NCBI GenBank assembly: GCA_038087875.1
Contig: CM075985.1
Span: forward strand, 25,110,001-25,174,000
Direction of reading: 5' to 3'
DNA: 64,000 nucleotides
Source: Malacoraja senta
Lineage: Eukaryota
A program made the position numbers and the translations under genes. Numbering within the stretch: position 1 is the first letter of the stretch; the number at the start of each line of letters is the position of its first letter. The notes beneath the pieces are model-generated. The model was not told where the DNA came from. It did not search any database and saw only the letters and a list, made by a program, of their open reading frames with translations. This document shows positions 1-64,000 of this stretch, in pieces.

Positions 1-12
1 TTGTTGTACTTC
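1..12 (-). CDS. Exon C, partial (cut by window edge)
   Basis: ttgttgtacttc|ctgttg matches the 5' part of exon C. Confidence 0.6.
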
Positions 13-3000
13 CTGTTGTAATTGTAATTTGGAAACAGAAAGAAAAATCATCAAATTGAAGACATTTTTGACTACGGCAAAGCAGTAAAATTGATCATCA
101 TCCACTATTTGGTTATTTTAGAGACACTCAATGTTAGAGCAAAAATAAATTATTGTTTTTTAATATAACATGGTCTCCTTCAGGTGGATAAGTGGAAATG
201 GCAACATTGGTACAAAAATCACTATTTAATCATGTGACGTTTTTCAAAACTTTTTTTACCTTACTAGACAAAATGGTGCTTGATTTTTTTGGCTATATCC
301 TGAGGCAACTTGAAATGCAGATTTGAGTTGATGGATTTGAGTCAAATACTCTCATTGTTTGCTTCTGTAATTATTTGGTGAATCTATTGAAAAAAGAACT
401 CACCACTTGTGGAACTGGTAGAGGGAGTTGTTGTTACTTTGGTTGTAGTTGGCTCTGCTGGAGAACAAGGGAAAGTATTAAAAAAATGCTGAATACCAGC
501 TCCATTAGCAACTAATTAGAGAGAGTGATTTGACAAACATGGTGAAGTGGATACGAAAAGTAATGATTAATGTGCAGTCCTCAAATACAACATAGCAAGG
601 TTAGGTACCATGGAGCAAACCATCAGTTGCACCTGTTCTTATAAATGTATTCTGACGTAATGATAGATAAATGAAAGGATGCATAGAGTACAGTGAACAT
701 GGGTGTCGCAATCTGTACACAGATTTAACTTGATTTGTAAATGCAGAGTGCAACTTTCAAACAAGGATCGATGCTGAATTTTTTGCAATTTGCGATACAT
801 TTCTAAAAGACTTGGAAGTAAGTGAAGATGGGTTGATTAGTAAGTTTGCAGATGACACCAAGATTGGTGTAGTTCTGGAAGAGTTTGGAAGTCATGTAAC
901 AGCTTTGTAGATCTTTGGTTAGGCCACATTTGAAGTATTGCGTGCAGTTTTGGTCTCAACACACAGGAAGCATTTGAAGGCTTTGGAGAGTGTAAAGAAC
1001 AGGTTGACCAGAATGCTGCCTAATGTAAGTTATTTGTTGTTCGGTTGGTAAAATTGGATTATTTTCTCGAGAAGATCGGAAGTTGAGGGAACACCTGATG
1101 GTAGTGTCTGGAAATATGAGACGCATAAATAGGGTAGAGTGTTATTTCCATGGTAGAAATGTCAAAGGCTAGAGGGCACAGCTTTAAGGTGAGTGGGGAA
1201 AAATGTAATGGAGATTACCGTATTAAGATTTTTAACAATTAAAAAAAAATGTTCGGCACAGATACTGTGGACCGAAGATATTGTGGATTGTGGTCCTGCG
1301 CTGTACTGTTGTATTTGACGATTTATAAAATGTCAGCCTAAGTGTACTACTTTCGCAAAAATTGCAACGTTGAAAATACTAAATAAGGATTGACATGTGC
1401 TTGCATTTCTAGTAAAACATGCATTTCTGATGTCATTTGAACAAATACTTCACTTACCAGATGTGGAACTGGGAGGAGGGGAATGTGTTGTTGATGCAGT
1501 TGTAACTGGGAAAACAAAAGTAAAAATTCAGCTGCTGCAGCTTTCTGATGTTGAGTACACTGATGATTAATAACGCCTTAATAGATGAAACTCCTTCTAT
1601 CTTGATCTGTAACAGGCAAACACTGATCCAAATCAATGCTCACTAGCTTTCAATTTATGTCAGATAGGGAAATATCTTATCCACTTCTATATTATTCAAG
1701 CAGGTGTACTGAATGTGGAAAGAACAAAATCATGAATTTAATTGCATCCTGTAAATGACAATAATCTTGTACATTTCCACAGACTGCTGCTCTTGATGAC
1801 ACTGCGCTGGTGAATGCATTCGTGTATTCATATACGTAACAATGCAATTTTTCTTATATCATTTGAAGAAATCCATCACTTACCAGTTGTTGAATGATGA
1901 ACAGACGGAGTGATTGTTGTACTTCCTGTTGTAATTATAATTTGGAAACAGAAAGAAAAATAATCAAATTGAAGACATTTTTGACTACTGCAAAGTAGTC
2001 AAATTGATCATCATCCACTATTTGGTTATTTTATAGACACTCAAGCTTAGAGCAAAAATAAATTATTGCTTTTTAATATAACATGGTCTCCTTCAGATGG
2101 ATGTGGAAATGTCAACATTGGTACAAAAATCACTATTTAATCATGTGACGTTTTTCAAAACTTTATTTACCTTACTAGACAAAATGGTGCTTGATTTTTT
2201 TGGCTATTTTCCTGAGGCAACTTGAAATGCAGATTTGAGTTGATGGATTTGTGTCAAATAATCTCATTGTTTTCTTTTGTAATTATTTGGTGATTCAATT
2301 GAAAAAAGAACTCACCACTTGTGAAACTGGTAGAGGGAGTTGTTGTTACTTTGGTTGTAGTTGGCTCTGCTGGAGAACAAGGGAAAGTATTAAAAAATGC
2401 TGCACATCAGCTCTATTTGCAGCTAATTAGAGAGAGTGACTTGACAAACATGGTTAAGTGGATACGAAAAGTAATGATTAATGTGCAGTCCTCAAATACA
2501 TCATAGCAAGGTTAGGTACCATGGAGCAAACCATCAGTTGCACCTGTTCTTATAAATGGATTCTGACGTAATGATAGATAAATGAAGGGATGCATAGAGT
2601 ACAGTGAACATGGGTGTCGCAATATGTACACAGATTTAACTTGATTTGTAAATGCAGAGTGCAACTTTCAAACAAGGATCGATGCTGAATTTTTTGCAAT
2701 TTGCGATACATTTCTAAAAGACTTGGAAGTAAATGAAGATGGGTTGATTAGTAAGTTTGAAGATGACACCAAGATTAGTGTAGTTCTGGAAGAGTTTGGA
2801 AGACATGTTACAGCTTTGTAGATCTTTGGTTAGGCCACATTTGAAGTATTGCGTGCAGTTTTGGTCTCAATACACAGGAAGCATTTGAAGGCTTTGGCGA
2901 GTGTAAAGAACAGGTTGACCAGAATGCTGCCTAATGTAAGATATTTGTTGTTCGGTTGATGAAATTGGATTATTTTCTCGAGAAGATCGGAAGTTGAGGG

Positions 3001-6000
3001 AACACCTGATGGTAGTGTCTGGAAATATGAGACGCATAAATAGGGTAGTGTTATTTCCAGGGTAGAAATGTCAAAGGCTAGAGGACACAGCTTTAAGGTG
3101 AGTGGGGGAAAATGTAATGGAGTTTACCGTATTAAGATTTTTAACATTTAAAAAAAAATGATCGGCACAGATACTGTGGACTGAAGATATTGTGGATTGT
3201 GGTCCTGCACTGTACTGTTGTATTTGACGATTTATAAAATGTCAGCCTAAGAGTACTACTTTCGCAAAAATTGCAACGTTGAAAATACTAAATAAGGATT
3301 GACATGTGCTTGCATTTCTAGTAAAACATGCATTTCTGGTCATTTCAACAAATCACTTACCAGATGTGGAACTGGGAGGAGGGTGATGTGTTGTTGATGC
3401 AGTTGTAACTGGGAAAACAAAAGTAAAAATTCAGCTGCTGCAGCTTTCTGATGTTGAGTACGCTGATGATTGATAACGCCTTAAGAGATGAAACTCCTTC
3501 TATCTCGATCTGTAACAGGCAAACTCTGATCCAAATCAATGCTCTAGCTTTCAATTATGTCATATAGGGAAATATCTTATCCACTTCTATATTATTCAAG
3601 CAGGTGTACTGAATGTGGAAAGATCAAAATCATGAATTTTATTGCATCCTGTAAATAACAATAATCTTGTACATTTCCACAGACTGCTGCTCTTGATGAA
3701 ACTGCGCTGGTGAATGCATTCGTGTATACATATACGTAACAATGCAATTGTTCTTATATCATTTGAAGAAATCCATCACTTACCAGTTGTTGAATGATGA
3801 ACAGACGGAGTGATTGTTGTACTTCCTGTTGTAATTGTAATTTGGAAACAGAAAGAAAAATAATCAAATTGAAGACATTTTTGACTACTGCAAAGCAGTA
3901 AAATTGATCATCATCCACTATTTGGTTATTTTATAGACACTCAATGTTAGAGCAAAAATAAATTATTGCTTTTTAATATAACATGGTCTCCTTCAGGTGG
4001 ATGTGGAAATGTCAACATTGGTACAAAAATCACTATAAAATGACTATAAAAATCACTATTTAATCACTATAAAAAATCACTATTTAAAACCACTATTGAG
4101 GAAGGACATCCTTGTGATTGAGTCAGTGCAGCGTAGGATCACGAGATTGATCCCAGGGATGGCAGGGATGGCATATGAGGAAAGATTGAAAAAACTAGGC
4201 TTGTATTCACTGGAGTTTAGAAGGATGAGGGGGTTTCTTATAGCAACATATAAAATTATAAAAGGACTGGACAAGCTAGAGGCAGGAAAATTGTTCCCAA
4301 TGTTGGGCGAGTCCAGAACCAGGAGCCACAGTCTTAGAATAAAGGGGAGGTCATTTAAGACTGAGGTGAGAAAAAACATTTTCACCCAGTTAGTTGTGAA
4401 TTTATGGAATTCCCTGACACAGAGGGCAGTGGAGGTCAAATCACTGGATGGATTTAAGAGAGAGTTAGATAGAGCTCTAGGGTCTAGTGGAGTCAAGGGA
4501 TATGGGGAGAAGACAGGCACGGGTTATTGATAGGGGACGATCAGCCATGATCATAATGAATGGCGGTGCTGTTTCGAAGGGCCGAATGGCCTCCTCCTCC
4601 ACCTATTTTCTTTGTTTCTATGTTGCAATGTTTCTATGTTAATCATGTGACGTTTTTCAAAACTTTATTTACCTTACTAGACACAATGGTGCTTGATTGT
4701 TTTGGCTATTTCCTGAGGCAACTTGAAATGCAGATTTGAGTTGATGGATTTGTGTCAAATACTCTCATTGTTTGCTTTTGTAATTATTTGGTGATTCTAT
4801 TGAAAAAAGAACTCACCACTTGTGGAACTGGTAGAGGGAGTTGTTGTTACTTTGGTTGTACTTGGCTCTGCTGACGAACAAGGGAAAGTATTAAAAAATG
4901 CTGCACACCAGCTCCATTTGCAACTAATTAGAGAGAGTGACTTGACAAACATGGTGAAGTGGATACGACAAGTAATGATTAATGTGCAGTCCTCAAATAC
5001 AACATAGCAAGGTTAGGTACCATGGAGCAAACCATCAGTTGCACCTGTTCTTATAAATGTATTCTGACGTAATGATAGATAAATTAGGGGATGCATAGAG
5101 TACAGTGAACATGAGTGTCGCAATCTGTTCACAGATTTAACTTGATTTGTAAATGCAGAGTGCAACTTTCAAACAAGGATCGATGCTGAATTTTTTGCAA
5201 TTTGCGATACATTTCTAAAAGTCTTGGAAGTACATGTAGATGGGTTGATTAGTAAGTTTGCAGATGACACCAAGATTGGTATAGTTCTGGAAGAGTTTGG
5301 AAGTCATGTAACAGATTTGTAGATCTTTGGTTAGGCCACATTTGAAGTATTCAATGCTCTAGCTTTCAATTATGTCATATAGGGAAATATCTTATCCACT
5401 TCTATATTATTCAAGCAGGTATACTGAATGTGGAAAGAACAAAATCATGAATTTTATTGCATCCTGTAAATGACAATAATCTTGTACATTTCCACAGACT
5501 GCTGCTCTTCATGAAACTACGCTGGTGAATGCATTCGTGTATTCATATACGTAACAATGCAATTTTTCTTGTATCATTTGAAGAAATCCATCACTTACCA
5601 GTTGTTGAATGATGAACAGACGGAGTGATTGTTGTACTTCCTGTTGTAATTGTAATTTGGAAACAGAAAGAAAAATCATCAAATTGAAGACATTTTTGAC
5701 TACGGCAAAGCAGTAAAATTGATCATCATCCACTATTTGGTTATTTTAGAGACACTCAATGTTAGAGCAAAAATAAATTATTGTTTTTTAATATAACATG
5801 GTCTCCTTCAGGTGGATAAGTGGAAATGGCAACATTGGTACAAAAATCACTATTTAATCATGTGACGTTTTTCAAAACTTTTTTTACCTTACTAGACAAA
5901 ATGGTGCTTGATTTTTTTGGCTATATCCTGAGGCAACTTGAAATGCAGATTTGAGTTGATGGATTTGAGTCAAATACTCTAATTGTTTGCTTTTGTATTT

Positions 6001-9000
6001 ATTTGGTGAATCTATTGAAAAAAGAACTCACCACTTGTGGAACTGGTAGAGGGAGTTGTTGTTACTTTGGTTGTAGTTGGCTCTGCTGGAGAACAAGGGA
6101 AAGTATTAAAAAAATGCTGAATACCAGCTCCATTAGCAACTAATTAGAGAGAGTGATTTGACAAACATGGTGAAGTGGATACGAAAAGTAATGATTAATG
6201 TGCAGTCCTCAAATACAACATAGCAAGGTTAGGTACCATGGAGCAAACCATCAGTTGCACCTGTTCTTATAAATGTATTCTGACGTAATGATAGATAAAT
6301 GAAAGGATGCATAGAGTACAGTGAACATGGGTGTCGCAATCTGTACACAGATTTAACTTGATTTGTAAATGCAGAGTGCAACTTTCAAACAAGGATCGAT
6401 GCTGAATTTTTTGCAATTTGCGATACATTTCTAAAAGACTTGGAAGTAAGTGAAGATGGGTTGATTAGTAAGTTTGCAGATGACACCAAGATTGGTATAG
6501 TTCTGGAAGAGTTTGGAAGTCATGTAACAGCTTTGTAGATCTTTGGTTAGGCCACATTTGAAGTATTGCGTGCAGTTTTGGTCTCAACACACAGGAAGCA
6601 TTTGAAGGCTTTGGAGAGTGTAAAGAACAGGTTGACCAGAATGCTGCCTAATGTAAGTTATTTGTTGTTCGGTTGGTAAAATTGGATTATTTTCTCGAGA
6701 AGATCGGAAGTTGAGGGAACACCTGATGGTAGTGTCTGGAAATATGAGACGCATAAATAGGGTAGAGTGTTATTTCCATGGTAGAAATGTCAAAGGCTAG
6801 AGGGCACAGCTTTAAGGTGAGTGGGGGAAAATGTAATGGAGATTACCGTATTAAGATTTTTAACAATTAAAAAAAAATGTTCGGCACAGATACTGTGGAC
6901 CGAAGATATTGTGGATTGTGGTCCTGCGCTGTACTGTTGTATTTGACGATTTATAAAATGTCAGCCTAAGTGTACTACTTTCGCAAAAATTGCAACGTTG
7001 AAAATACTAAATAAGGATTGACATGTGCTTGCATTTCTAGTAAAACATGCATTTCTGATGTCATTTCAACAAATACTTCACTTACCAGATGTGGAACTGG
7101 GAGGAGGGGAATGTGTTGTTGATGCAGTTGTAACTGGGAAAACAAAAGTAAAAATTCAGCTGCTGCAGCTTTCTGATGTTGAGTACACTGATGATTAATA
7201 ACGCCTTAATAGATGAAACTCCTTCTATCTTGATCTGTAACAGGCAAACACTGATCCAAATCAATGCTCACTAGCTTTCAATTTATGTCATATAGGGAAA
7301 TATCTTATCCACTTCTATATTATTCAAGCATGTGTACTGAATGTGGAAAGAACAAAATCATGAATTTAATTGCATCCTGTAAATGACAATAATCTTGTAC
7401 ATTTCCACAGACTGCTGCTCTTGATGACACTGCGCTGGTGAATGCATTCGTGTATTCATATACGTAACAATGCAATTTTTCTTATATCATTTGAAGAAAT
7501 CCATCACTTACCAGTTGTTGAATGATGAACAGATGGAGTGATTGTTGTACTTCCTGTTGTAATTATAATTTGGAAACAGAAAGAAAAATAATCAAATTGA
7601 AGACATTTTTGACTACTGCAAAGTAGTCAAATTGATCATCATCCACTATTTGGTTATTTTATAGACACTCAAGGTTAGAGCAAAAATAAATTATTGCTTT
7701 TTAATATAACATGGTCTCCTTCAGGTGGATGTGGAAATGTCAACATTGGTACAAAAATCACTATTTAATCATGTGACGTTTTTCAAAACTTTCTTTACCT
7801 TACTAGACAAAATGGTGCTTGATTTTTTTGGCTATTTTCCAGAGGCAACTTGAAATGCAGATTTGAGTTGATGGATTTGTGTCAAATAATCTCATTGTTT
7901 GCTTTTGTAATTATTTGGTGATTCTATTGAAAAAAGAACTCACCACTTGTGAAACTGGTAGAGGGAGTTGTTGTTACTTTGGTTGTACTTGGCTCTGCTG
8001 ACGAACAAGGGAAAGTATTAAAAAATGCTGCACACCAGCTCCATTTGCAACTAATTAGAGAGAGTGACTTGACAAACATGGTGAAGTGGATACGACAAGT
8101 AATGATTAATGTGCAGTCCTCAAATACAACATAGCAAGGTTAGGTACCATGGAGCAAACCATCAGTTGCACCTGTTCTTATAAATGTATTCTGACGTAAT
8201 GATAGATAAATTAGGGGATGCATAGAGTACAGTTAACATGGGTGTCGCAATCTGTACACAGATTTAACTTGATTTGTAAATGCAGAGTGCAACTTTCAAA
8301 CAAGGATCGATGCTGAATTTTTTGCAATTTGCGATACATTTCTAAAAGTCTTGGAAGTACATGTAGATGGGTTGATTAGTAAGTTTGCAGATGACACCAA
8401 GATTGGTATAGTTCTGGAAGAGTTTGGAAGTCATGTAACAGCTTTGTAGATCTTTGGTTAGGCCACATTTGAAGTATTCAATGCTCTAGCTTTCAATTAT
8501 GTCATATAGGGAAATATCTTATCCACTTCTATATTATTCAAGCAGGTGTACTGAATGTGGAAAGAACAAAATCATGAATTTTATTGCATCCTGTAAATGA
8601 CAATAATCTTGTACATTTCCACAGACTGCTGCTCTTGATGAAACTACGCTGGTGAATGCATTCGTGTATTCATATACGTAACAATGCAATTTTTCTTATA
8701 TCATTTGAAGAAATCCATCACTTACCAGTTGTTGAATGATGAACAGACGGAGTGATTGTTGTACTTCCTGTTGTAATTGTAATTTGGAAACAGAAAGAAA
8801 AATCATCAAATTGAAGACATTTTTGACTACGGCAAAGCAGTAAAATTGATCATCATCCACTATTTGGTTATTTTAGAGACACTCAATGTTAGAGCAAAAA
8901 TAAATTATTGTTTTTTAATATAACATGGTCTCCTTCAGGTGGATAAGTGGAAATGGCAACATTGGTACAAAAATCACTATTTAATCATGTGACGTTTTTC

Positions 9001-12000
9001 AAAACTTTTTTTACCTTACTAGACAAAATGGTGCTTGATTTTTTTGGCTATATCCTGAGGCAACTTGAAATGCAGATTTGAGTTGATGGATTTGAGTCAA
9101 ATACTCTCATTGTTTGCTTTTGTAATTATTTGGTGAATCTATTGAAAAAAGAACTCACCACTTGTGGAACTGGTAGAGGGAGTTGTTGTTACTTTGGTTG
9201 TAGTTGGCTCTGCTGGAGAACAAGGGAAAGTATTAAAAAAAATGCTGAATACCAGCTCCATTAGCAACTCATTAGAGAGAGTGACTTGACAAACATGGTG
9301 AAGTGGATACGAAAAGTAATGATTAATGTGCAGTCCTCAAATACAACATAGCAAGGTTAGGTACCATGGAGCAAACCATCAGTTGCACCTGTTCTTATAA
9401 ATGTATTCTGACGTAATGATAGATAAATGAAGGGATGCATAGAGTACAGTGAACATGGGTGTCGCAATCTGTACACAGATTTAACTTGATTTGTAAATGC
9501 AGAGTGCAACTTTCAAACAAGGATCGATGCTGAATTTTTTGCAATTTGCGATACATTTTTAAAAGACTTGGAAGTAAGTGAAGATGGGTTGATTAGTAAG
9601 TTTGAAGATGACACCAAGATTGGTATAGTTCTGGAAGAGTTTGGAAGTCATGTTACAGCTTTGTAGATCTTTGGTTAGGCCACATTTGAAGTATTGCGTG
9701 CAGTTTTGGTCTCAACACACAGGAAGCATTTGAAGGCTTTGGAGAGTGTAATGAACAGGTTGACCAGAATGCTGCCTAATGTAAGTTATTTGTTGTTCGG
9801 TTGGTAAAATTGGATTATTTTCTCGAGAAGATCGGAAGTTGAGGGAACACCTGATGGTAGTGTCTGGAAATATGAGACGCATAAATAGGGTAGAGTGTTA
9901 TTTCCAGGGTAGAAATGTCAAAGGCTAGAGGGCACAGCTTTAAGGTGAGTGGGGGGAAATGTAATGGAGATTACCGTATTAAGATTTTTAACAATTAAAA
10001 AAAAATGTTTGGCACAGATACTGTGGACTGAAGATATTGTGGATTGTGGTCCTGCGCTGTACTGTTGTATTTGACGATTTATAAAATGTCAGCCTAAGAG
10101 TACTAGTTTCGCAAAAATTGCAACGTTGAAAATACTAAATAAGGATTGACATGTGCTTGCATTTCTAGTAAAACATGCATTTCTGATGTCATTTGAACAA
10201 ATACTTCACTTACCAGATGTGGAACTGGGAGGAGGGGAATGTGTTGTTGATGCAGTTGTAACTGGGAAAACAAAAGTAAAAATTCAGCTGCTGCAGCTTT
10301 CTGATGTTGAGTACACTGATGATTGATAACGCCTTAAGAAATGAAACTCCTTCTATCTTGATCTGTAACAGGCAAACACTGATCCAAATCAATGCTCACT
10401 AGCTTTCAATTTATGTCATATAGGGAAATATCTTATCCACTTCTATATTATTCAAGCAGGTGTACTGAATGTGGAAAGAACAAAATCATGAATTTAATTG
10501 CATCCTGTAAATTACAATAATCTTGTACATTTCCACAGACTGCTGCTCTTGATGAAACTGCGCTGGTGAATGCATTCGTGTATTCATATACGTAACAATG
10601 CAATTTTTCTTATATCATTTGAAGAAATATATCACTTACCAGTTGTTGAATGATGAACAGACGGAGTGATTGTTGTACTTCCTGTTGTAATTATAATTTG
10701 GAAACAGAAAGAAAAATAATCAAATTGAAGACATTTTTGACTACTGCAAAGCAGTAAAATTGATCATCATCCACTATTTGGTTATTTTAGAGACACTCAA
10801 GGTTAGAGCAAAAATAAATTATTGCTTTTTAATATAACATGGTCTCCTTCAGGTGGATAAGTGGAAATGTCAACATTGGTACAAAAATCACTATTTAATC
10901 ATGTGATGTTTTTCAAAACTTTATTTACCTTACTAGACAAAATGGTGCTTGATTTTTTTGGCTATTTTCCTGAGGCAACTTGAAATGCAGATTTGAGTTG
11001 ATGGATTTGTGTCAAATAATCTCATTGTTTGCTTTTGTAATTATTTGGTGATTCTATTGAAAAAAGAACTCACCACTTGTGGAACTGGTAGAGGGAGTTG
11101 TTGTTACTTTGGTTGTAGTTGGCTCTGCTGGAGAACAAGGGAAAGTATTAAAAAATGCTGCACATCAGCTCCATTTGCAGCTAATTAGAGAGAGTGACTT
11201 GACAAACATGGTGAAGTGGATACGAAAAGTAATGATTAATGTGCAGTCCTCAAATACAACATAGCAAGGTTAGGTACCATGGAGCAAACCATCAGTTGCA
11301 CCTGTTCTTATAAATGGATTCTGACGTAATGATAGATAAATGAAGGGATGCATAGAGTACAGTGAACATGGGTGTCGCAATATGTACACAGATTTAACTT
11401 GATTTGTAAATGCAGAGTGCAACTTTCAAACAAGGATCGATGCTGAATTTTTTGCAATTTGCGATACATTTCTAAAAGACTTGGAAGTAAGTGAAGATGG
11501 GTTGATTAGTAAGTTTGAAGATGACACCAAGATTGGTGTAGTTCTGGAAGAGTTTGGAAGCCATGTTACAGCTTTGTAGATCTTTGGTTAGGCCACATTT
11601 GAAGTATTGCGTGCAGTTTTGGTCTCAACACACAGGAAGCATTTGAAGGCTTTGGAGAGTGTAAAGAACAGGTTGACCAGAATGTTGCCAAATGTAAGAT
11701 ATTTGTTGTTCGGTTGGTAAAATTGGATTATTTTCTCGAGAAGATCGGAAGTTGAGGGAACACCTGATGGTAGTGTCTGGAAATATGAGACGCATAAATA
11801 GGGTAGAGTGTTATTTCCATGGTAGAAATGTCAAAGGCTAGAGGGCACAGCTTTAAGGTGAGTGGGGGAAAATGTAATGGAGATTACCGTATTAAGATTT
11901 TTAAAAATTAAAAAAAAATGTTTGGCACAGATACTGTGGACTGAAGATATTGTGGATTGTGGTCCTGCGCTGTACTGTTGTATTTGACAATTTATAAAAT

Positions 12001-39000: not shown

Positions 39001-42000
39001 AAAACAAAAGTAAAAATTCAGCTGCTGCAGCTTTCTGATGTTGAGTACACTGATGATTGATAACGCCTTAAGAGATGAAACTCCTTCTATCTTGATCTGT
39101 AACAGGCAAACTCTGATCCAAATCAATGCTCACTAGCTTTCAATTTATGTCATATAGGGAAATATCTTATCCACTTCTATATTATTCAAGCAGGTGTACT
39201 GAATGTGGAAAGAACAAAATCATGAATTTTATTGCATCCTGTAAATGACAATAATCTTGTACATTTCCACAGACTGCTGCTCTTGATGAAACTGCGCTGG
39301 TGAATGCATTCGTGTATTCATATACGTAACAATGCAATTTTTCTTATATCATTTGAAGAAATCCATCACTTACCAGTTGTTGAATGATGAACAGATGGAG
39401 TGATAGTTGTACTTCCTGTTGTAATTATAATTTGGAAACAGAAAGAAAAATAATGAAATTGAAGACATTTTTGACTACTCAAAGCAGTAAAATTGATCAT
39501 CATCCACTATTTGGTTATTTTATAGACACTCAATGTTAGAGCAAAAATAAATTATTGTTTTTTAATATAACATGGTCTCCTTCAGGTGGATAAGTGGAAA
39601 TGGCAACATTGGTACAAAAATCACTATTTAATCATGTGACGTTTTTCAAAGCTTTATTTACCTTACTAGACAAAATGGTGCTTGATTTTTTTGGCTATAT
39701 CCTGAGGCAACTTGAAATGCAGATTTGAGTTGATGGATTTGAGTCAAATACTCTCATTGTTTGCTTTTGTAATTATTTGGTGAATCTATTGAAAAAAGAA
39801 CTCACCACTTGTGGAACTGGTAGAGGGAGTTGTTGTTACTTTGGTTGTAGTTGGCTCTGCTGGAGAACAAGTGAAAGTATTAAAAAAATGCTGAATACCA
39901 GCTCCATTTGCAACTAATTAGAGAGAGTGACTTGACAAACATGGTGTAGTGGATACGAAAACTAATGATTAATGTTCAGTCCTCAAATACAACATAGCAA
40001 GTTTAGGTACCATGGAGCAAACCATCAGTTGCACCTGTTCTTATAAATGGATTCTGACGTAATGATAGATAAATGAAGGGATGCATAGAGTACAGTGAAC
40101 ATGGGTGTCGCAATCTGTACACAGATTTAACTTGATTTGTAAATGCAGAGTGCAACTTTCAAACAAGGATCGATGCTGAATTTTTTGCAATTTGCGATAC
40201 ATTTCTAAAAGACTTGGAAATAAGTGAAGAAGGGTTGATTAGTAAGTTTGAAGATGACACCAAGATTGGTGTAGTTCTGGAAGAGTTTGGAAGTCATGTT
40301 ACAGCATTGTAGATCTTTGGTTAGGCCACATTTGAAGTATTGCGTGCAGTTTTGGTCTCAACACACAGGAAGCACTTGAAGGCTTTGGAGAGTGTAAAGA
40401 ACAGGTTGACCAGAATGCTGCCTAATGTAAGATATTTGTTGTTCGGTTGGTAAAATTGGATTATTTTCTCGAGAAGATTGGATGTTGAGGGAACACCTGA
40501 TGGTAGTGTCTGGAAATATGAGACGCATAAATAGGGTAGAGTGTTATTTCCAGGGTAGAAATGTCAAAGGCTAGAGGGCACAGCTTTAAGGTGAGTGGGG
40601 GGAAATGTAATGGGGATTACCGTATTAAGATTTTTAACATTAAAAAAAAAAATGTTCGGCACAAATACTGTGGACTGAAGATATTGTGGATTGTGCTCCT
40701 GTGCTGTACTGTTGTATTTGACGATTTATAAAATGTCAGCCTAAGAGTACTACTTCGCAAAAATTGCAACGTTGAAAATACTAAATAAGGATTGACATGT
40801 GCTTGCATTTCTAGTAAAACATGCATTTCTGATGTCATTTGAACAAATACTTCACTTACCAGATGTGGAACTGGGAGGAGGGGAATGTGTTGTTGATGCA
40901 GTTGTAACTGGGAAAACAAAAGTAAAAATTCAGCTGCTGCAGCTTTCTGATGTTGAGTACACTGATGATTGATAACGCCTTAATAGATGAAACTCCTTCT
41001 ATCTTGATCTGTAACAGGCAAACTCTGATCCAAATCAATGCTCACTAGCTTTCAATTTATGTCATATAGGGAAATATCTTATCCACTTCTATATTATTCA
41101 AGCAGGTGTACTGAATGTGGAAAGAACAAAATCATGAATTTAATTGCATCCTGTAAATGACAATAATCTTGTACATTTCCACAGACTGCTGCTCTTGATG
41201 AAACTGCGCTGGTGAATGCATTCGTGTATTCATATACGTAACAATGCAATTTTTCTTATATCATTTGAAGAAATCCATCACTTACCAGTTGTTGAATGAT
41301 GAACAGATGGAGTGATTGTTGTACTTCCTGTTGTAATTGTAATTTGGAAACAGAAAGAAAAATAATCAAATTGAAGACATTTTTGACTGCTGCAAAGCAG
41401 TAAAATTGATCATCGTCCACTATTTGGTTATTTTAGAGACACTCAACGTTAGAGCAAAAATTAATTATTGTTTTTTAATATAACATGGTCTCCTTCAGGT
41501 GGATGTGGAAATGGCAACATTGGTACAAAAATCACTATTTAATCATGTGACATTTTTCAAAACTTTATTTACCTTACTAGACAAAATGGCGCTTGATTTT
41601 TTTGGCTATATCCTGAGGCAACTTGAAATGCAGATTTAAGTTGATGGGTTTGAGTCAAATACTCTCATTGTTTGCTTTTGTAATTATTTGGTGAATCTAT
41701 TGAAAAAAGAACTCACCACTTGTGGAACTGGTAGAGGGAGTTGTTGTTACTTTGGTTGTAGTTGGCTCTGCTGGAGAACAAGGGAAAGTATTAAAAAATG
41801 CTGCACACCAGCTCCATTTGCAGCTAATTAGATGGAGTGACTTGACAAACATGGTGAAGTGGATACGAAAAGTAATGATTAATGTGCAGTCCTCAAATAC
41901 AACATAGCAAGGTTAGGTACCATGGAGCAAACCATCAGTTGCATCTGTTCTTATAAATATATTCTGACGTAATGATAGATAAATGAAGGGATGCATAGAG

Positions 42001-45000
42001 TACAGTGAACATGGGTGTCGCAATCTGTACACAGATTTAACTTGATTTGTAAATGCAGTGCAACTTTCAAACAAGGATCGATGCTGAATTTTTTGCAATT
42101 TGCGATACATTTCTAAAAGACTTGGAAGTAAGGGAAGATGGGTTGATTAGTAAGTTTGATGTTGACACCAAGATTGGTGTAGTTCTGGAAGAGTTTGGAA
42201 GTCATGTTACAGCTTTGTAGATCTTTGGTTAGGCCACATTTGAAGTATTGCGTGCAGTTTTGGTCTCCGCACACTGGAAGCATTTGAAGGCTTTGGAGAG
42301 TGTAAAGAACAGGTTGACCAGAATGTTGCCTAATGTAAGGTATTTGTGTTCGGTTGGTAAAATTTGATTATTTTCTCGAGAAGATTGGAAGTTGAGGGAA
42401 CACCTGATGGTAGTGTCTGGAAATATGAGACGCATAAATAGGGTAGAGTGTTATTTCCAGGGTAGAAATGTCAAAGGCTAGAGGGCACAGCGTTAAGGTG
42501 AGTGGGGGAAAATGTAATGGAGATTACCGTATTAAGATTTTTAACATAAAAAAAAAAATGTTCGGCACAAATACTGTGGACATAAGATATTGTGGATTGT
42601 GGTCCTTGCTGTACTGTTGTAGTTGACGATTTATAAAATGTCAGCCTAAGAGTACTACTTTCGCAAAAATTGTAACGTTGAAAATACTAAATAAGGATTG
42701 ACATGTGCTTGCATTTCCAGTTAAACATGCATTTCTGATGTCATTTGAACAAATACTTCACTTACCAGAAGTGGAACTGGGAGGAGGGTGATGTGTTGTT
42801 GATGCAGTTGTAACTGGGAAAACAAAAGTAAAAATTCAGCGGCTGCAGCTTTCTGATGTTGAGTAGACTGATGATTGATAACGCCTTAATAGATGAAACT
42901 CCTTCTATCTTGATCTGTAACAGGCAAACTCTGATCCAAATCAATGCTCACTAGCTTTCAAAGATGTCATATAGAGAAATATCTTATCCACTTCTATATT
43001 ATCCAAGCAGGTGTACTGAATGTGGAAAGAACAAAATCATGAATTTAATTGCATCCTGTAAATGACAATAATCTTGTACATTTCCACAGACTGCTGCTCT
43101 TGATGAAACTGCGCTGGTGAATGCATTCGTGTATTCATATACGTAACAATGCAATTTTTCTTATATCATTTGAAGAAATCCATCACTTACCAGTTGTTGA
43201 ATGATGAACAGACGGAGTGATTGTTGTACTTCCTGTTGTAATTGTAATTTGGAAACAGAAAGAAAAATAATGAAATTGAAGACATTTTTGACTGCTGCAA
43301 AGCAGTAAAATTGATCATCGTCCACTATTTGGTTATTTTAGAGACACTCAATGTTAGAGCAAAAATGAATTATTGTTTTTTAATATAACATGGTCTCCTT
43401 CAGGTGGATAAGTGGAAATGGCTACATTGGTACAAAAATCACTATTTAATCATGTGACATTTTTCAAAACTTTATTTACCTTACTAGACAATATGGCACT
43501 TGATTTTTTTGGCTATATCCTGAGGCAACTTGAAATGCAGATTTAAGTTGATGGGTTTGAGTCAAATACTCTAATTGTTTGCTTTTGTAATTATTTGGTG
43601 AATGTATTGAAAAAAGAACTCACCACTTGTGGAACTGGAAGAGTGAGTTGTTGTTACTTTGGTTGTAGTTGGCTCTGCTGGAGAAGAAGGGAAAGTATTA
43701 AAAAAATGCTGAATACCAACTCCATTAGCAACTAATTAGAGAGAGTGACTTGACAAACATGGTGAAGTGGATGCGAAAAGTAATGAATAATGTGCAGTCC
43801 TCAAATACAACATAGCAAGGTTAGGTACCATGGAGCAAACCATCAGTTGCACCTGTTCTTATCAATGGATTCTGATGTAATGATAGATAAATGAAGGGGT
43901 GCATAGAACATGGGTGTCGCAATCTGTACACAGATTTAACTTGATTTGTAAATGCAGAGTGCAACTTTCAAACAAGGATCGATGCTGAATTTTTTGCAAT
44001 TTGCGAAACATTTCGAAAAGATTGGAAGTAGATATGGATGGGTTGATAAGTAAGTTCGCAGATGACACCAAAATTGGTATAGTTCTGGAAGAGTTTGGAA
44101 GTCATGTTACAGCTTTGTAAATCTTTGGTTAGGCCACATTTGAAGTATTGCGTGCAGTTTTGGTCTCCGCACACAGGAAGCATTTGAATGCTTTGGAGAG
44201 TGTAAAGAACAGGTTGACCAGAATGCTGCCTAATGTAAGATATTTGTTGTTCGGTTGGTAAAATTGAATTATTTTCTCAAGAAGATCGGAAGTTGAAGGA
44301 ACACCTGATGGTAGTGTCTGGAAATTCGAGACGCATAAATAGGGTAGAGTGTTATTTCCAGGGTAGAAATGTCAAAGGCTAGAGGGCATATCTTGAAGGT
44401 GAGTGGGGGAAAATGTAATGGAGATTACAGTATTAAGATTTTTAACATTTTATATAAAATGTTCGGCCCAGATACTGTGGACTGAAGATATTGTGGATTG
44501 TGGTCCTGTGCTGTACTGTTGTACTTGTCGATTTATAATATGTCAGCCTAAGAGTACTACTTTCGCAAAAGTTGCAACGTTGAAAATACTAAATAAGGAT
44601 TGACATGTGTTTGCATTTCTAGTAAAACATGCATTTCTGATGTCATTTGAACAAATCACTTACCAGATGTGGAACTGGGAGGAGGGGAATGTGTTGTTGA
44701 TGCAGTTGTAACTGGGAAAACAAAAGTAAGAATTTCAACATTGGTAAAAGAAGCGCTCTTTACTCATGTGATATTTTTCAAAACTTTATTGACCTTACTA
44801 GACGATATGGTCATTGATTTTTTTGTCTACTTTTCAGATGCAACTTGAAATGCAAGTTTATGTTAATGTATTTGAGTCAAATACTCTCATCGTTTGCTTT
44901 TGTAATTAATTGTTGATTCTACTGAAACAAAAACTCACCAATTGTGGAACTGGTAGAGGGAGTTGTTGTTACTTTGGTTGTAGTTGGCTGTGCTGGATAA

Positions 45001-48000
45001 CAAGGGAAAGTATTATAAAATGCTGTATACTGTAGCGGCACCTAGTGGTTGCTTGAGGCAAAGCGATCCCTCGCTTTTAAATGGCGCCATCATGTGATCG
45101 CGGGTGTGTTTTCGCGGGCTTTTGGTTCCTCAGTTGATCTAGCTCCACCCAGCACGCAGTTTTTGTATACTTCTTTTTGTTTGTCGTTTACAAATAAAGA
45201 TTTGTTTTAATCAACCTGCTCGTCTAGCCACAGTGGTGACCCCGCCGGTCCGATCGTGATTTCGGTTCCCGACAATAAGTGCCGTCGAAAACCTCGACGC
45301 CCAGCCCACCCAGCAAAATGCGGTGGCTCTGAAACTGCCCGTTTTCTGCTAAGTGCAGCCTCAAGTGTGGTTCGCCCACATTGAGGCCCAATTTGAGCTC
45401 CGCAATATCGTCGCAGACACCACTCGCTACTTTTACGTGGTTTGGGAGCTCAGTCAGGAGACTGCCATCCGATTGTTGGCGTACCTGCAGAATCCGCCTG
45501 CAATCGGCAAATACGAGGGCCTCAAGGCACTGCTGTTCCACACTTTCGGGCTCAGTCGCGACGATCGCGCCGCCCGCTTTCTCCATGTGGACAGCCTCGG
45601 CGTTCGTAAGCCTTCCCCGCTGATGAGCAAGATACTCCCCCTGATGGATGGCCACCAGCCCTGCCTGCTTTTCGAACAGGCTTTCCTGGAGCAGATGCCC
45701 AATGACAACCGCCTGCTACTCGCTGGATCGGATTTTGCCGACCCCCTGCAGCTTGCTGAATGGGCCGACGTGCTGTGTGTCGCCAAGCAGCTGGACGGTG
45801 GGTCTATCAACCGGGTGTCCAGAGCCTCGCACCACCAGCCTCTCAGAGACGTCCAGCCCTCCGCTGCCATTGCCGCACCGCAGCCGCCCGCTGGAGACCA
45901 TGGAAAGTGCCATTGGTGCTAATACCACCAACGCTGGGGTGCAGTGGCTCATCGATGCCATGCCCCCTGCTCGTTTCCGGGAAATGCCTCGGCCAGTAGA
46001 GACTATCGCGGTCGGCCAGAATCATCGCCTCTACATCCAGGATCACTGTTCCGGGCTTCGTTTCCTCGTTGACTTCGGGGCTGTGCTGAGCATCCTCCGT
46101 CCGACTGGACTTGACACCTGTGCTGGTAAGCGTGGCCGCGTCCTGACCGCCATCAACAGTAGACCCATTCGCACGTACCGCACATGGACACTTTCCCTTG
46201 TTCTCGACTCCCGCCCGTACTCATGGACTTTCACCATCGCGGATGTTTCCCAGTTGTTACTGCGTGCCGATTTCCTGTGGGCCTTCTCGTTAATGGTGGA
46301 CATGCGGGGCTGGCGCCTTGTGCCTCTGGAGTCCCCTAGGCCCACGGTCCCTGAGGCCCGCTGACCCATCCAGCCTGCAGCTGTGATCGGTGGCTGATGG
46401 GGACGGGCCGTATACCTCCTTACTCGCCGAATCCCCCAGACCTTCTGACCCCCCGTATTTGCGCAGCTGCTCTTAAGCATGGGGTGGTGCATCACATCCC
46501 TACCGCCGGTCCCCCACTGTATGCACGGGCGCGCAGGCTCCCGCCCGACAACCTGCGGATCGCGAAGGAGGAATTCCGCCTAATGGAGGACATGGGGATT
46601 GTGCGGCGCTCTGACAGCCTGTGGGCGTCCCCGTTGCACATGGTCCCCAAATCATCTGGGGGTTGGAGACCGTGTGGGGATTACCGACGTCTGAACGCTG
46701 TCACGACCACGGACTGCATATTCAGGACTTTACAGCCGACCTGTTTGGTGCTAACTTCTTTTCCAAGGTGGACCTGGTGCGCGGCTACCACCAGATTCCC
46801 GTCCACCCCGATGACGTGCCCAAGACCGCTATCATCACCCCATTCGGCCTTTTTGAATGGCTGCGCATGCCGTTTGGTTTAAAGAACGCCATGCAGGCTT
46901 TCCTGCGGCTCATGGATAAGGTGGGCCGGGGGTTGGAGTTCGTGTTCATGTAACTGGACAACATTCTGGTCGCCAGCCGCTCCCACCCGGAACACTGTGC
47001 ACACCTACAGGTGTTATTCCAGCGGCTTCAGGATCACAGGCTTGTAATCAACCCTGTCAAGTGTCAGTTTGGCCTTCGCTCCATTTCCTTCCTGGGGCAC
47101 CACGTCCCCTCGCAGGGCGCGGCCCGCTAAGGTGGAGGCCATTTGGCAGTTCCCTCGGCCCCTCACCGACAAGGGGTTGCAGGAGTTTGTCGGCATGATC
47201 AATTTTTATCATCACTTCGTGCCGGTGGCGGCCGGGATCAAGCGGCCTTTGTTTCAGTGCCTAGCCGGTAAGCCACGGGACCTCGTGTGGGATGAGGAGG
47301 TCGCGGCTGCTTTCGACGGTGCGAAGCAGGCGTTGGCCAAGGCCACCATGCTGGTGCACCCGCGAGCTGCTGCTCCGACCGTCCTCACCGTGGATGCCTC
47401 CGACACGGCTGTCGGAGGGGTTCTGGAGCAGTTCCTCGCCGGCCGCTGGCAGCTGCTTGCATTTATCAGTCATCACCTGCGACCTCGGAGCGTAGCTACA
47501 GCGCTTTCGACCGGGAACTCCTGGCCCTTTATTTGGCTGTCCGCCATTTCCGTTATTTTCTCGAGGGCTGGCCTTTCATGGCCTTCACAGACCACAAGCC
47601 CTTGACGGTCACCTTTACCAAGGTGTTCGACCCCTGGTCAGCTTGGCAACAATGGCACCTGCCATTTTTGTTGGAGTTCACCACCGACGTTCAGCACATG
47701 GCGGGCAAGCTGAATCTGGTCGCGGAGACTTTGTCTCGCCCTGCGGTCCCGGCCGTGGTGTCTGTGGACCGCGGCATGGATTATTCTGGGCTAGCCGCCG
47801 CGTAACGCGAGGGTGGCGAAATGGATGTTTACCGGACGGCTGCCTCGGGGTTGAAGTTGGCTGATGTCCCGTTCAGTCCAGCAGGTGTGTCGGTCCTCTG
47901 CAACGTGTCCACCGGGAGACCACGCCCTATCGTCCCATGTGGGTTGGCGGCGGCGTGTTTTCGATGCTATCCACGGTCTGGCCCATCCTTCCATCCGGGC

Positions 48001-63121: not shown

Positions 63122-64000
63122 TAGTCATAGTCATAGAGTGATAGTGTGGAAACAGGCCCTTCAGCCCAACTTGCCCACACCGGCCAACATGTCCCAGCTA
63201 CACTAGTCCCACCTGCGTGTGCTTGATCCATATTCCTCCAAACCTGTCCTATCCATGTACCTGTCCAAGTGTTTCTTAAACATTGGGATGGTCCCAGCCT
63301 CAACTACCTCCTCTGGCAGCTTGTTCCATACACGCACCACCCTTGGTGTGAAAAAGTTACCCCTCAGATTCCTATTAATGTTTTTCCCCTTCACCTTGAA
63401 CCAATGTCCTCTGGTCCTCGATTCCCCTACTCTGGGCAAGAGATTCTGTGCATCTACCCGATCTATTCCTCTCATGATTTTATATACCTCTATAAGATCA
63501 CGCCTCATCCTCCTGCTCTCCAAGGAATAGAGACCCAGCCAACTCAACCTCTCCCTATAGCTCAGACCCTCTAGTCCTGGCAACATCTTCAGAAATCTTC
63601 TCTGAACCCTTTCAAGCTTGACAATATCTTTCCTATAACATGGTGCCCAGAACTGAACACAATATTCTTAATGCGGTCTCAGCAACATGGCCTCCCAACT
63701 ACTATACTCTATACTCTGACTGATGGCCAATGTGCCAAAAGCCTTTTTGACCATCTTATCTACCTGCGACTCGACCTTCAAGGATCCATTTGCCTGCACT
63801 CCTAGATCCCTCTGCTCAACAACACTCCCCAGAGGCCTCCCATTCACTGTGTAGGTCCTGCCCGTGTTAGATGTCCAAAAATGCAACACCTCACATTTCT
63901 TGGTATTAAATTCCATCAACCATTCCTCAGCCCACCTGGTCAATCGATCAAGATCCTGCTGCAATCATTCACAGCCATCTTCACTATCTGCAAAACCACC
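63122..64000 (-). mobile_element. CR1 3' fragment (runs off window)
   Basis: [23 protein letters not shown]; LGLYSLE-RRMR-DLIEVYK; VWNKLPEEVVEAG; (gactat)n tail. Confidence 0.93.

What the first reader, a model, noticed from the sequence alone, without database searches (positions are those of the whole stretch)
1..45030. Mucin PTS domain built from a ~45 kb tandem array of interchangeable micro-exon cassettes
Seen: what looks like a 1.9 kb satellite hides three minus-strand micro-exons per unit (54/48/42 nt). All are multiples of 3, phase 1-1, with GT-AG sites, and I saw no stops or indels in the ~69 intact copies. Every exon ends in G, so the junction residue depends only on the downstream exon (Ala/Val/Gly) and any subset of exons gives an in-frame PTS chain. 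Only ~7.5% of each unit is coding. Known: MUC2/MUC5AC/MUC5B encode PTS in large exons, whereas mammalian MUC19 and Xenopus integumentary mucins use many small exons. Inference: a system that can set mucin length and glycan density by both exon skipping and unit copy number, likely unannotated in a chondrichthyan.
Basis: partly seen in the sequence, partly recalled or inferred. Interest (0 to 1): 0.9.

Follow-up and report, generated by a model that had tools for sequence, protein, structure and literature searches.

The report
Shark mucin core from repeated micro-exons
What looks like a 45-kb satellite is the sugar-carrying middle of a MUC19-type mucus gene of a cartilaginous fish, written as about 70 tiny in-frame exons; the design is real but already known from other mucins and annotated in related sharks.

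Summary
On the minus strand, window 1-45029 is a tandem array of about 1.91-kb units. It holds 69 intact micro-exons: 24 A (54 nt), 24 C (42 nt) and 21 B (48 nt). All have AG/GT sites, lengths divisible by three and a final G, and none has a stop or indel.

Read in phase 1 they give 1104 aa that are 73% Thr/Ser/Pro. That phase is fixed independently by upstream exons (61313-54394), which encode the end of a D3 assembly and run in frame into the array.

The gene belongs to the MUC19 family. Its intron positions and phases match a rodent Muc19 and a Heptranchias 'mucin-19-like' gene, whose core is also built of 57-nt, phase 1-1, G-ending exons.

Two cautions apply:
- The copies are young (2-3% divergence), so 'no stops or indels' carries almost no weight as evidence of selection.
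- Regulated combinatorial splicing is untested here. The only hint is that NCBI isoform models of a Mustelus homologue differ by 20-41-aa cassettes.

Mucin cores split over many exons, and length tuning by splicing, were described in 2006. The scan's first readers also noted similar arrays elsewhere in this genome; I did not check those. Verdict: a new member of a known kind, of moderate interest.

The parts
1..45029 (-). Tandem array of about 1.91-kb units. Each full unit carries exons A, C and B in that order of transcription. The array runs off the window start.
   Evidence: k-mer spacing. Exon order is ABACBACBACBCBACBACBCBACBACBACBACBACBACBACACBACACBACBACBACACBACACBACBA. Multi-unit duplications of 3-8.4 kb are 98.3-99.3% identical. 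First-stage notes s1-140203 and s1-140804 say it continues into the neighbouring window; I did not check this.
404..44992 (-). 24 copies of exon A (54 nt; consensus peptide [18 protein letters not shown]). Upper coordinates: 44992, 43677, 41770, 39859, 36264, 34355, 30768, 28862, 26953, 24443, 23096, 21198, 19284, 18069, 16157, 14942, 13038, 11127, 9212, 7997, 6085, 4870, 2369, 457. Each ends 53 nt lower.
   Evidence: The acceptor is CTCCAG|CAG in 20 copies, CGTCAG|CAG in 3 and ATCCAG|CAC in 1. The donor is G|GTGAGT in all 24.
1884..43232 (-). 24 copies of exon C (42 nt; [14 protein letters not shown]). Upper coordinates: 43232, 41327, 39415, 37731, 35818, 33910, 32235, 30323, 28417, 25908, 23997, 22651, 20753, 18839, 17625, 15712, 14497, 12594, 10681, 8767, 7553, 5640, 3825, 1925. 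Each ends 41 nt lower. A 25th copy starts at 12 and is cut by the window edge.
   Evidence: The acceptor is CAACAG|GAA with a 59-nt AG-free zone in all 24 copies. The donor is CTG|GTAAGT in all 24.
1458..44711 (-). 21 copies of exon B (48 nt; VTTASTTH[S/H]PPPSSTS). Upper coordinates: 44711, 42813, 40907, 38995, 37311, 35401, 33500, 31815, 29906, 28000, 25490, 23577, 22243, 20333, 17205, 14080, 12174, 10261, 7133, 3408, 1505. Each ends 47 nt lower.
   Evidence: The acceptor is TCCCAG|TTA in all 21 copies. The donor is GTAAGT in 20 and GTAAAT in one (the copy at 31815).
37938..37979 (-). Stump of exon A: acceptor plus about 14 nt of exon, with no donor. A second one lies at 32442-32483.
   Evidence: only query positions 3-44 align; the B-to-C spacing is 1216-1217 nt at these two places.
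45030..49332 (+). Degenerate LTR retrotransposon inserted in an intron, antisense to the gene.
   Evidence: LTR pair at 45030-45230 and 49098-49332, 91-92% identical. Broken reverse-transcriptase and integrase-like ORFs lie on the plus strand. GC is 50-60% against about 36% in the array.
49342..51634 (-). Older, diverged copy of the unit, carrying exons E5, E6 and E7. E5 is 51634-51593 (42 nt, C-like, [14 protein letters not shown]). E6 is 51175-51119 (57 nt, [19 protein letters not shown]). E7 is 50353-50306 (48 nt, B-like). A truncated B stump lies at about 50701.
   Evidence: The B-A intron copy is 82.8% identical over 1027 nt.
54394..54420 (-). Exon E4 (27 nt, DVSCTTPAN), the link between D3 and the PTS exons. 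It is phase 1-1.
   Evidence: A rodent Muc19 has a 27-nt exon at the same place.
55335..55366 (-). Exon E3 (32 nt, ..[11 protein letters not shown]), the end of the D3 assembly.
58516..58657 (-). Exon E2 (142 nt, [15 protein letters not shown]...CDCKE), covering TIL3/E3 of D3.
   Evidence: HMMER against 1.84 billion proteins gave a best hit of 74% identity to a Cetorhinus maximus 4340-aa mucin.
61188..61313 (-). Exon E1 (126 nt, [20 protein letters not shown]...ILEG), the start of TIL3. It carries Tyr (TAC, 61278-61276) where homologues have Cys.

Best explanation
The window holds the junction between the N-terminal D3 assembly and the central O-glycosylated (PTS) core of a MUC19-family gel-forming mucin gene of a cartilaginous fish, transcribed from the minus strand.

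The core is not one large exon. It is a chain of 42-57-nt exons, all phase 1-1 and all ending in G. The oldest exons (E4-E7) are single copies. A three-exon, 1.9-kb block (A-C-B, itself built from older paralogous exon-intron modules plus a dispersed-repeat fragment in the long intron) was then amplified by unequal crossing-over. This amplification included multi-unit steps of 3-10 kb. It produced at least 24 units in this window, adding at least 1104 residues that are 73% Thr/Ser/Pro.

Because each exon is a multiple of three and symmetric, gain, loss or skipping of any unit or exon keeps the frame. Protein length is therefore set mainly by genomic copy number.

I expect most exons to be included, since their splice sites are near consensus. 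Some skipping and a 3-nt acceptor choice at exon A are tolerated.

Shown: the anatomy, the frame continuity, the family and the conserved design. Inferred: transcription, inclusion of all copies, glycosylation, and any regulation of skipping.
For: - **Anatomy:** 69 intact exons with canonical sites.
- **Frame continuity:** the open frame runs without a break from the D3 exons through E4-E7 into the array.
- **D3 tail homology:** human MUC2 D3 in the PDB at E = 3.9e-28; shark mucins at up to 78% identity; mammalian MUC19 at 54-57%. In the search seeded with the Cetorhinus homologue, the named mammalian hits are MUC19.
- **Intron phases:** the order after the D3-tail exons is 1, 2, 1, 1, 1... 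in the window. It is the same in Heptranchias perlo 'mucin-19-like' and in Apodemus Muc19.
- **Same design in a homologue:** the Heptranchias locus has fifteen 57-nt phase 1-1 G-ending PTS exons on the gene strand and none on the other strand.
- **Small exons in a mammal:** Apodemus Muc19 has 27-, 42- and 33-nt phase 1-1 G-ending PTS exons before its large exon.
- **Composition:** 37.6% Thr, 23.5% Ser, 12.1% Pro and no Cys.
- **Strand asymmetry:** 152 candidates against 0.
- **Recent amplification:** unit diversity is 2-3% and there are long 98-99% identical multi-unit duplicates.
- **Ordinary intron DNA:** the unit's long intron contains a repeat that also occurs elsewhere in the window.
Against: - No transcript evidence for this gene. 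Two searches for spliced peptide fragments found nothing, although length filters make this a weak negative.
- No sign of purifying selection inside the array. Non-synonymous to synonymous changes are 12:4 against a random expectation of about 70:30. Exon diversity (0.021) is only slightly below intron diversity (0.030).
- Exon C is open in all three frames by my own reading of its consensus (not computed), so openness alone proves nothing.
- The D3 exon has Tyr where the homologues inspected have Cys. This could mark a decaying paralogue.
- The N- and C-terminal parts of the gene lie outside the window.
- The copy number of a near-identical array may be mis-assembled.
Confidence: 0.78

Rival explanations
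1. The gene and anatomy are the same, but the cassettes are used combinatorially. Regulated, tissue-specific skipping of near-identical micro-exons sets mucin length and glycan density.
For: All exons are symmetric, so any subset is in frame. NCBI isoform sets of homologues are very large, up to X48 in Mustelus asterias and X39 in Scyliorhinus canicula. The Mustelus isoforms differ by 20-, 21-, 37-, 40- and 41-aa PTS blocks and by single residues. The Heptranchias gene model uses 10 of 15 candidate cassettes. The same idea was proposed for chicken Muc13 (PMC1552070).
Against: Splice sites are uniformly strong and near-identical, so nothing distinguishes one copy from another for a regulator. 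Isoform models over repeats can arise from ambiguous short-read junction mapping. There are no transcripts from this species.
Confidence: 0.25
2. The gene is a dead or dying paralogue in a mucin gene cluster. The array is a relic that still looks like exons only because it was amplified recently.
For: Variation within the array looks neutral. Tyr replaces a Cys that is present in the roughly a dozen homologues printed and in human MUC2 and MUC5AC. There are exon stumps without donors, and an LTR element sits in the gene. First-stage notes report several similar genes nearby, so redundancy is plausible (unchecked).
Against: All seven unique exons in the window (E1-E7) are open with intact splice sites, and so are all 69 repeat exons. 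PTS domains normally evolve almost neutrally at the sequence level. Intronic transposable elements and unit variants are ordinary in live genes.
Confidence: 0.12
3. The array is a non-coding macrosatellite that merely resembles exons by chance or through its base composition.
For: A/C-rich sequence is often open in several frames, and there is no conservation signal within the array.
Against: The frame is dictated by homologous D3 exons upstream and yields 73% Thr/Ser/Pro. The strand asymmetry is 152 against 0. The same exon design occurs in annotated homologues in two other species.
Confidence: 0.03

Closest known systems
MUC19 / Muc19 (mammalian gel-forming mucin; also chondrichthyan 'mucin-19-like' and 'mucin-2-like' gene models)
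   Same: The D3 tail is homologous, at 54-57% identity to mammalian MUC19. Exon boundaries and intron phases after D3 are identical. D3 is followed by small phase 1-1, G-ending PTS exons: 27/42/33 nt in Apodemus and 57 nt in Heptranchias.
   Different: In the rodent model the small exons lead into one large PTS exon (444 aa or more). In this window no large exon is seen, and a three-exon block is amplified at least 24 times. The PTS peptides share composition only. From my own memory, not verified here (the paper is not held): Zhu et al. 2011 report 182 exons and about 20 splice variants for human MUC19.
Chicken and zebrafish Muc13 PTS domain (Lang, Hansson, Samuelsson 2006, PMC1552070)
   Same: The PTS domain is spread over multiple exons, each encoding one nearly identical repeat unit. 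[quoted passage not shown]
   Different: Muc13 is a transmembrane SEA-domain mucin, unrelated to the VWD mucins. Its unit structure and copy number differ.
Xenopus tropicalis Otogl (MucXS) and chicken MUC2
   Same: Both are gel-forming mucins whose central mucin domain is multi-exonic (PMC5789918). The chicken MUC2 repeats span exons 32-45 (PMC3549977).
   Different: They are different paralogues. Their repeats are longer (69 aa in chicken) and interspersed with Cys-rich domains. Neither is described as a kb-scale tandem array of micro-exons.
Exon-bearing VNTRs such as LPA kringle IV-2, and schistosome micro-exon genes and SmPoMuc (own knowledge; micro-exon genes are summarised in PMC4015677)
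   Same: Works alike. A kb-scale tandem unit carries in-frame exons, so copy number sets protein size (LPA). Symmetric micro-exons allow skipping to give protein variants (schistosome micro-exon genes).
   Different: These are unrelated proteins and lineages, so this is an analogy of mechanism only. Copy-number polymorphism and skipping are demonstrated there and not here.

Membership tests
MUC19-family gel-forming mucin | A D3 assembly (VWD3-C8-TIL3-E3) homologous to those of gel-forming mucins | tested here: met
   Only the TIL3/E3 tail lies in the window. It matches human MUC2 D3 at E = 3.9e-28, with MUC5AC and MUC5B next. It is up to 78% identical to shark mucins. Pfam on the fragments alone is below threshold.
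MUC19-family gel-forming mucin | Closer to MUC19 than to MUC2/5AC/5B/6 | tested here: inconclusive
   The window's tail is 54-57% identical to mammalian MUC19. By my count of the alignment it is roughly 44% identical to human MUC2. In the search seeded with the Cetorhinus homologue's D3 tail, the named mammalian hits are MUC19. No tree was built, only about 100 residues are available, and NCBI names for the shark genes vary (mucin-2/5AC/6/19-like).
MUC19-family gel-forming mucin | Gene structure: conserved intron positions and phases at the D3-PTS boundary, followed by small PTS exons | tested here: met
   The window's phases are 1, 2, 1, 1, 1.... Apodemus Muc19 and Heptranchias mucin-19-like have the same phases.
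MUC19-family gel-forming mucin | A signal peptide and D1-D2-D' at the N-terminus, and VWC plus cystine knot (no D4) at the C-terminus | not testable with these tools
   These parts lie outside the window. First-stage note s1-175134 reports such a C-terminus for a neighbouring gene; I did not check it.
MUC19-family gel-forming mucin | A central domain rich in Pro/Thr/Ser | tested here: met
   1104 aa from 69 exons, with T 37.6%, S 23.5%, P 12.1% and no Cys.
Multi-exonic PTS domain (Muc13 / Otogl type) | Each PTS repeat lies on its own exon with canonical splice sites, and the exons are symmetric so the frame is kept | tested here: met
Multi-exonic PTS domain (Muc13 / Otogl type) | Transcript evidence that the exons are spliced together | not testable with these tools
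   No RNA data are available. Peptide-fragment searches were blank. Support is indirect only: annotated homologues contain such exons.
Combinatorial micro-exon cassette system (schistosome micro-exon-gene-like) | Documented transcript variants produced by differential inclusion of micro-exons | not testable with these tools
   Only NCBI isoform models of a Mustelus homologue are available. They differ by 20-41-aa PTS blocks.
Exon-bearing VNTR (LPA KIV-2-like) | A kb-scale tandem unit carrying exons whose summed length is a multiple of three | tested here: met
   The unit is about 1911 nt with 144 nt coding.
Exon-bearing VNTR (LPA KIV-2-like) | Copy number varies between individuals | not testable with these tools
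   Only one assembly is available. Multi-unit duplicates at 98-99% identity make unequal exchange plausible.

The most novel reading that the evidence does not exclude
Cartilaginous-fish MUC19-type mucins, this one included, use their arrays of indistinguishable symmetric micro-exons as a length dial. Regulated or stochastic skipping, together with copy-number polymorphism, would yield a spectrum of mucin lengths and glycan loads within one animal and between individuals. Mammals lost this mode when the core fused into one large exon.
Probability: 0.2. Interest if true: 0.6.

Novelty: new member of a known kind. Interest (0 to 1): 0.4.

Why it matters
It shows that a stretch any repeat-masker would call a satellite is most probably about 1100 codons of a mucus protein. 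This matters for annotating shark and ray genomes.

It also dates the small phase 1-1, G-ending PTS exons that follow D3 in MUC19 to the common ancestor of jawed vertebrates. In these fishes that module was amplified into arrays, rather than the core lying in one large exon as in the mammalian model.

It offers a natural system for asking whether mucin length is set by copy number, by splicing, or by both. The principle itself has been in the literature since 2006, so this finding extends it rather than overturning it.

Tried and rejected
- **Selection within the array.** I looked at exon against intron diversity, indels and non-synonymous against synonymous changes. No usable signal emerged because the copies are too young. 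I therefore dropped 'no stops or indels' as evidence.
- **Spliced-peptide searches.** I searched for 36-115-aa and 86-275-aa database fragments with A-C-B-A and with the D3 tail plus E5-E7. Both were blank. The tool's length filter excludes full-length mucins, so this says little.
- **Pfam on single exons.** Nothing passed threshold. VWC scored 21.4 bits against a cut-off of 27.6. An earlier attempt failed because I gave a wrong frame.
- **Rfam.** No hits over the window at gathering thresholds.
- **Tandem Repeats Finder.** It cannot see the 1.9-kb period and found only small microsatellites.
- **Genomic DNA for homologues.** One mustelid MUC19 isoform is not on record.
- **Zhu et al. 2011 on human MUC19.** The library does not hold the paper, so what I say about it is from memory.
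- **MUC2 orthology.** I considered this from the best PDB hit. I rejected it in favour of MUC19 because the PDB holds no MUC19 and the mammalian database hits are MUC19.
- **PTS similarity to other mucins.** It is compositional only.

Full report
**1. The observation**

The window is AT-rich (about 36% GC) with constant positive GC skew from 1 to about 44 kb. It then turns GC-rich between 45 and 50 kb. Identical 20-mers recur mostly at 1906-1914 nt, with secondary spacings of about 1215, 1687, 3128, 5031, 5628, 10072 and 22083 nt. One unit read on the minus strand shows three short exon-like segments, each with a pyrimidine tract, an AG and a near-consensus donor.

BLAST with exon-plus-flank queries, followed by realignment, gave 69 intact copies inside the array:
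- 24 copies of A (54 nt)
- 24 copies of C (42 nt)
- 21 copies of B (48 nt)
- a further C cut by the window start
- two stumps of A that keep the acceptor but lost the donor

Every intact copy has AG and GT, a length divisible by three, a final G and no stop in phase 1. The coding share is 144 of about 1911 nt, or 7.5%.

A scan for AG...GT[AG]AG segments of 21-150 nt that are Ser/Thr/Pro-rich in phase 1 found 152 candidates on the minus strand and none on the plus strand.

**2. How much of it is evidence**

Less than it seems, because the copies are young.

| Measure | Introns | Exons |
|---|---|---|
| Aligned columns | 1777 | 144 |
| Variable sites | 252 | 16 |
| Indel events | 28 | 0 |
| Diversity | about 0.03 | about 0.021 |

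About 2.3 exon indels would be expected, so seeing none has a probability near 0.1.

Only 6 of 423 possible single-base changes would make a stop. The 16 variable exon sites split 12 non-synonymous to 4 synonymous, close to the random 70:30. By my own reading of its consensus (not computed), exon C is open in all three frames. So 'no stops or indels in 69 copies' does not demonstrate selection.

**3. What fixes the reading frame**

Upstream on the same strand I found four exons, listed here with the three PTS exons that follow them:

| Exon | Coordinates | Length | Content |
|---|---|---|---|
| E1 | 61313-61188 | 126 nt | start of TIL3 |
| E2 | 58657-58516 | 142 nt | TIL3/E3 |
| E3 | 55366-55335 | 32 nt | end of D3 |
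| E4 | 54420-54394 | 27 nt | link to PTS |
| E5 | 51634-51593 | 42 nt | C-like PTS |
| E6 | 51175-51119 | 57 nt | PTS |
| E7 | 50353-50306 | 48 nt | B-like PTS |

The joined translation of E1-E4 matches the end of the D3 assembly of human MUC2 in the PDB at E = 3.9e-28, with MUC5AC and MUC5B next. E4 ends in phase 1. E5, E6, E7 and then the array all continue that phase without a stop.

Read this way, the 69 array exons give 1104 residues with 37.6% Thr, 23.5% Ser, 12.1% Pro, 7% His and no Cys. This frame hand-over from a homologous domain, not conservation within the array, is the main reason to call the array coding.

**4. Limits of the array**

- The LTR pair lies at 45030-45230 and 49098-49332 and is 91-92% identical.
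- Between them are broken reverse-transcriptase and integrase-like ORFs on the plus strand.
- This is a 4.3-kb retroelement in an intron.

Beyond it, 49342-51634 is an older copy of the unit, about 83% identical to the array units. It carries E5-E7 and a truncated B. The unit's long B-A intron contains a dispersed repeat that recurs elsewhere in the window.

Inside the array, segments of 3-8.4 kb are 98.3-99.3% identical at offsets of 3.1, 5.0, 8.2, 10.1, 13.2 and 18.8 kb. Growth was therefore by multi-unit unequal exchange. First-stage notes say the array continues into the next window; I did not check this.

**5. Which gene**

A HMMER search with E2 against 1.84 billion proteins gave, as the best full-length match to E2, a 4340-aa Cetorhinus maximus protein at 74% identity. 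Its gene spans 159 kb. Many chondrichthyan proteins followed, named mucin-19-like, mucin-2-like, mucin-5AC-like or mucin-6-like, together with rat mucin-19.

A search with the D3 tail of the Cetorhinus protein returned shark and ray mucins. Of its mammalian hits, all that carry a gene name are MUC19. The window's D3 tail compares as follows:
- up to 78% identical to Pristiophorus japonicus 'mucin-2-like'
- 54-57% identical to mammalian MUC19
- about 44% identical to human MUC2, by my count of the alignment

I then obtained genomic DNA for two homologues and mapped their proteins onto it.
- **Heptranchias perlo 'mucin-19-like'.** The D3 tail has the same exon boundaries. It is followed by 57-nt exons in phase 1-1, ending in G, with GTGAGT donors. 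Fifteen such candidate exons lie on the gene strand and none on the other strand, and the NCBI model uses ten of them.
- **Apodemus speciosus Muc19.** The boundaries and phases are again the same (1, 2, 1, 1, 1, 1). Three small PTS exons of 27, 42 and 33 nt, all phase 1-1 and G-ending, lead into a large PTS exon.

The window's gene therefore shares both sequence and gene structure with MUC19. The G-ending phase-1 PTS micro-exon is an old feature of that family. Lang et al. 2016 report three Muc19 paralogues in Callorhinchus (PMC4948705). First-stage notes describe several similar arrays within a few hundred kb in this genome, and a MUC19-type C-terminus nearby (unchecked). This would fit a cluster of paralogues.

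**6. Mechanism**

- **Shown:** the symmetric exon design, the hierarchical duplication, and the recent multi-unit amplification.
- **Inferred:** the exons are spliced in series into a Thr/Ser/Pro-rich chain that is O-glycosylated, and copy number sets its length.

The splice sites are strong and uniform. Donors are G|GTGAGT or G|GTAAGT. AG-free zones of 25-59 nt lie upstream of each acceptor. I therefore expect inclusion by default. Exon A has a CAG|CAG tandem acceptor in 23 of 24 copies, which could add or drop one Ala.

Regulated combinatorial skipping is possible but untested. The only hints are indirect:
- NCBI isoform models of a Mustelus homologue differ by PTS blocks of 20, 21, 37, 40 and 41 aa and by single residues.
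- Scyliorhinus canicula models differ by larger in-frame blocks.

Isoform models over repeats can also come from ambiguous read mapping.

**7. What is known**

- Lang et al. 2006 showed that the PTS domain of chicken (and zebrafish) Muc13 is encoded by multiple exons, each a repeat unit. They proposed length control by alternative splicing (PMC1552070).
- Dubaissi et al. 2018 note a multi-exonic mucin domain in Xenopus Otogl (PMC5789918).
- The chicken MUC2 repeats span exons 32-45 (PMC3549977).
- From memory only, human MUC19 was reported with 182 exons and many splice variants. I could not read that paper.
- Schistosome micro-exon genes (PMC4015677) and LPA KIV-2 (own knowledge) are mechanistic analogues.
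- My literature searches found no paper describing chondrichthyan mucin micro-exon arrays. The genes are, however, present as models in many annotated shark and ray genomes.

**8. Verdict**

The finding is real and correctly read as a mucin core made of micro-exon cassettes. It is a further, expanded member of a known kind within the MUC19 family. The combinatorial-splicing claim is a hypothesis. Whether this paralogue is alive is not settled, given the Tyr in place of a conserved Cys in D3 and the lack of transcript evidence. Interest is moderate.

Noticed in passing
window 61276-61278 (minus strand, codon TAC in exon E1): Tyr stands where the roughly dozen chondrichthyan homologues I printed, rat MUC19, and human MUC2 and MUC5AC have Cys (motif E-C-S/E-W-H-Y). 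It is one transition away from TGC. It may change disulfide-linked multimerisation, mark a decaying paralogue, or be a base error. A first-stage note (s1-193232) flags the same codon.
   Followed up: partly
window 45030-49332 (+): A 4.3-kb LTR retrotransposon with 91-92% identical LTRs and frame-broken reverse-transcriptase and integrase ORFs. It is GC-rich (50-60%) against a 36% background and lies antisense in a mucin intron.
   Followed up: partly
window 3826-4816 and 25909-26899 (A-to-C introns of two units, 22083 nt apart): Both introns are 991 nt instead of about 391 nt. The extra roughly 600 nt includes a small AAAAATCACTAT-type microsatellite (4025-4097 and 26108-26180). This shared marker shows the two units derive from one duplication.
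   Followed up: no
window 54555-54980 (+), 56675-57363 (-), 59390-59602 (+), 63203-63964 (-): ORF fragments with the motifs ...[10 protein letters not shown]..., ...RGHSL..., ...RNFF..., which to me look typical of LINE reverse-transcriptase C-terminal ends. These are dispersed retroelement debris in the introns between the D3 exons.
   Followed up: no
L001 28718, 38968, 40816, 45334, 49928 (Heptranchias perlo mucin-19-like locus): Five well-formed 57-nt phase 1-1 PTS exon candidates are not used by the NCBI model XP_067860680.1. That model also ends by reading into an intron, so it is probably incomplete.
   Followed up: partly
L002 36295-36671 (Rhincodon typus): The 'mucin-19-like' model (757 aa, D assemblies only) ends 376 nt before a second model. 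The second model has CysD, VWD, C8 and a cystine knot. They are probably one mucin gene split in annotation at its PTS region.
   Followed up: no
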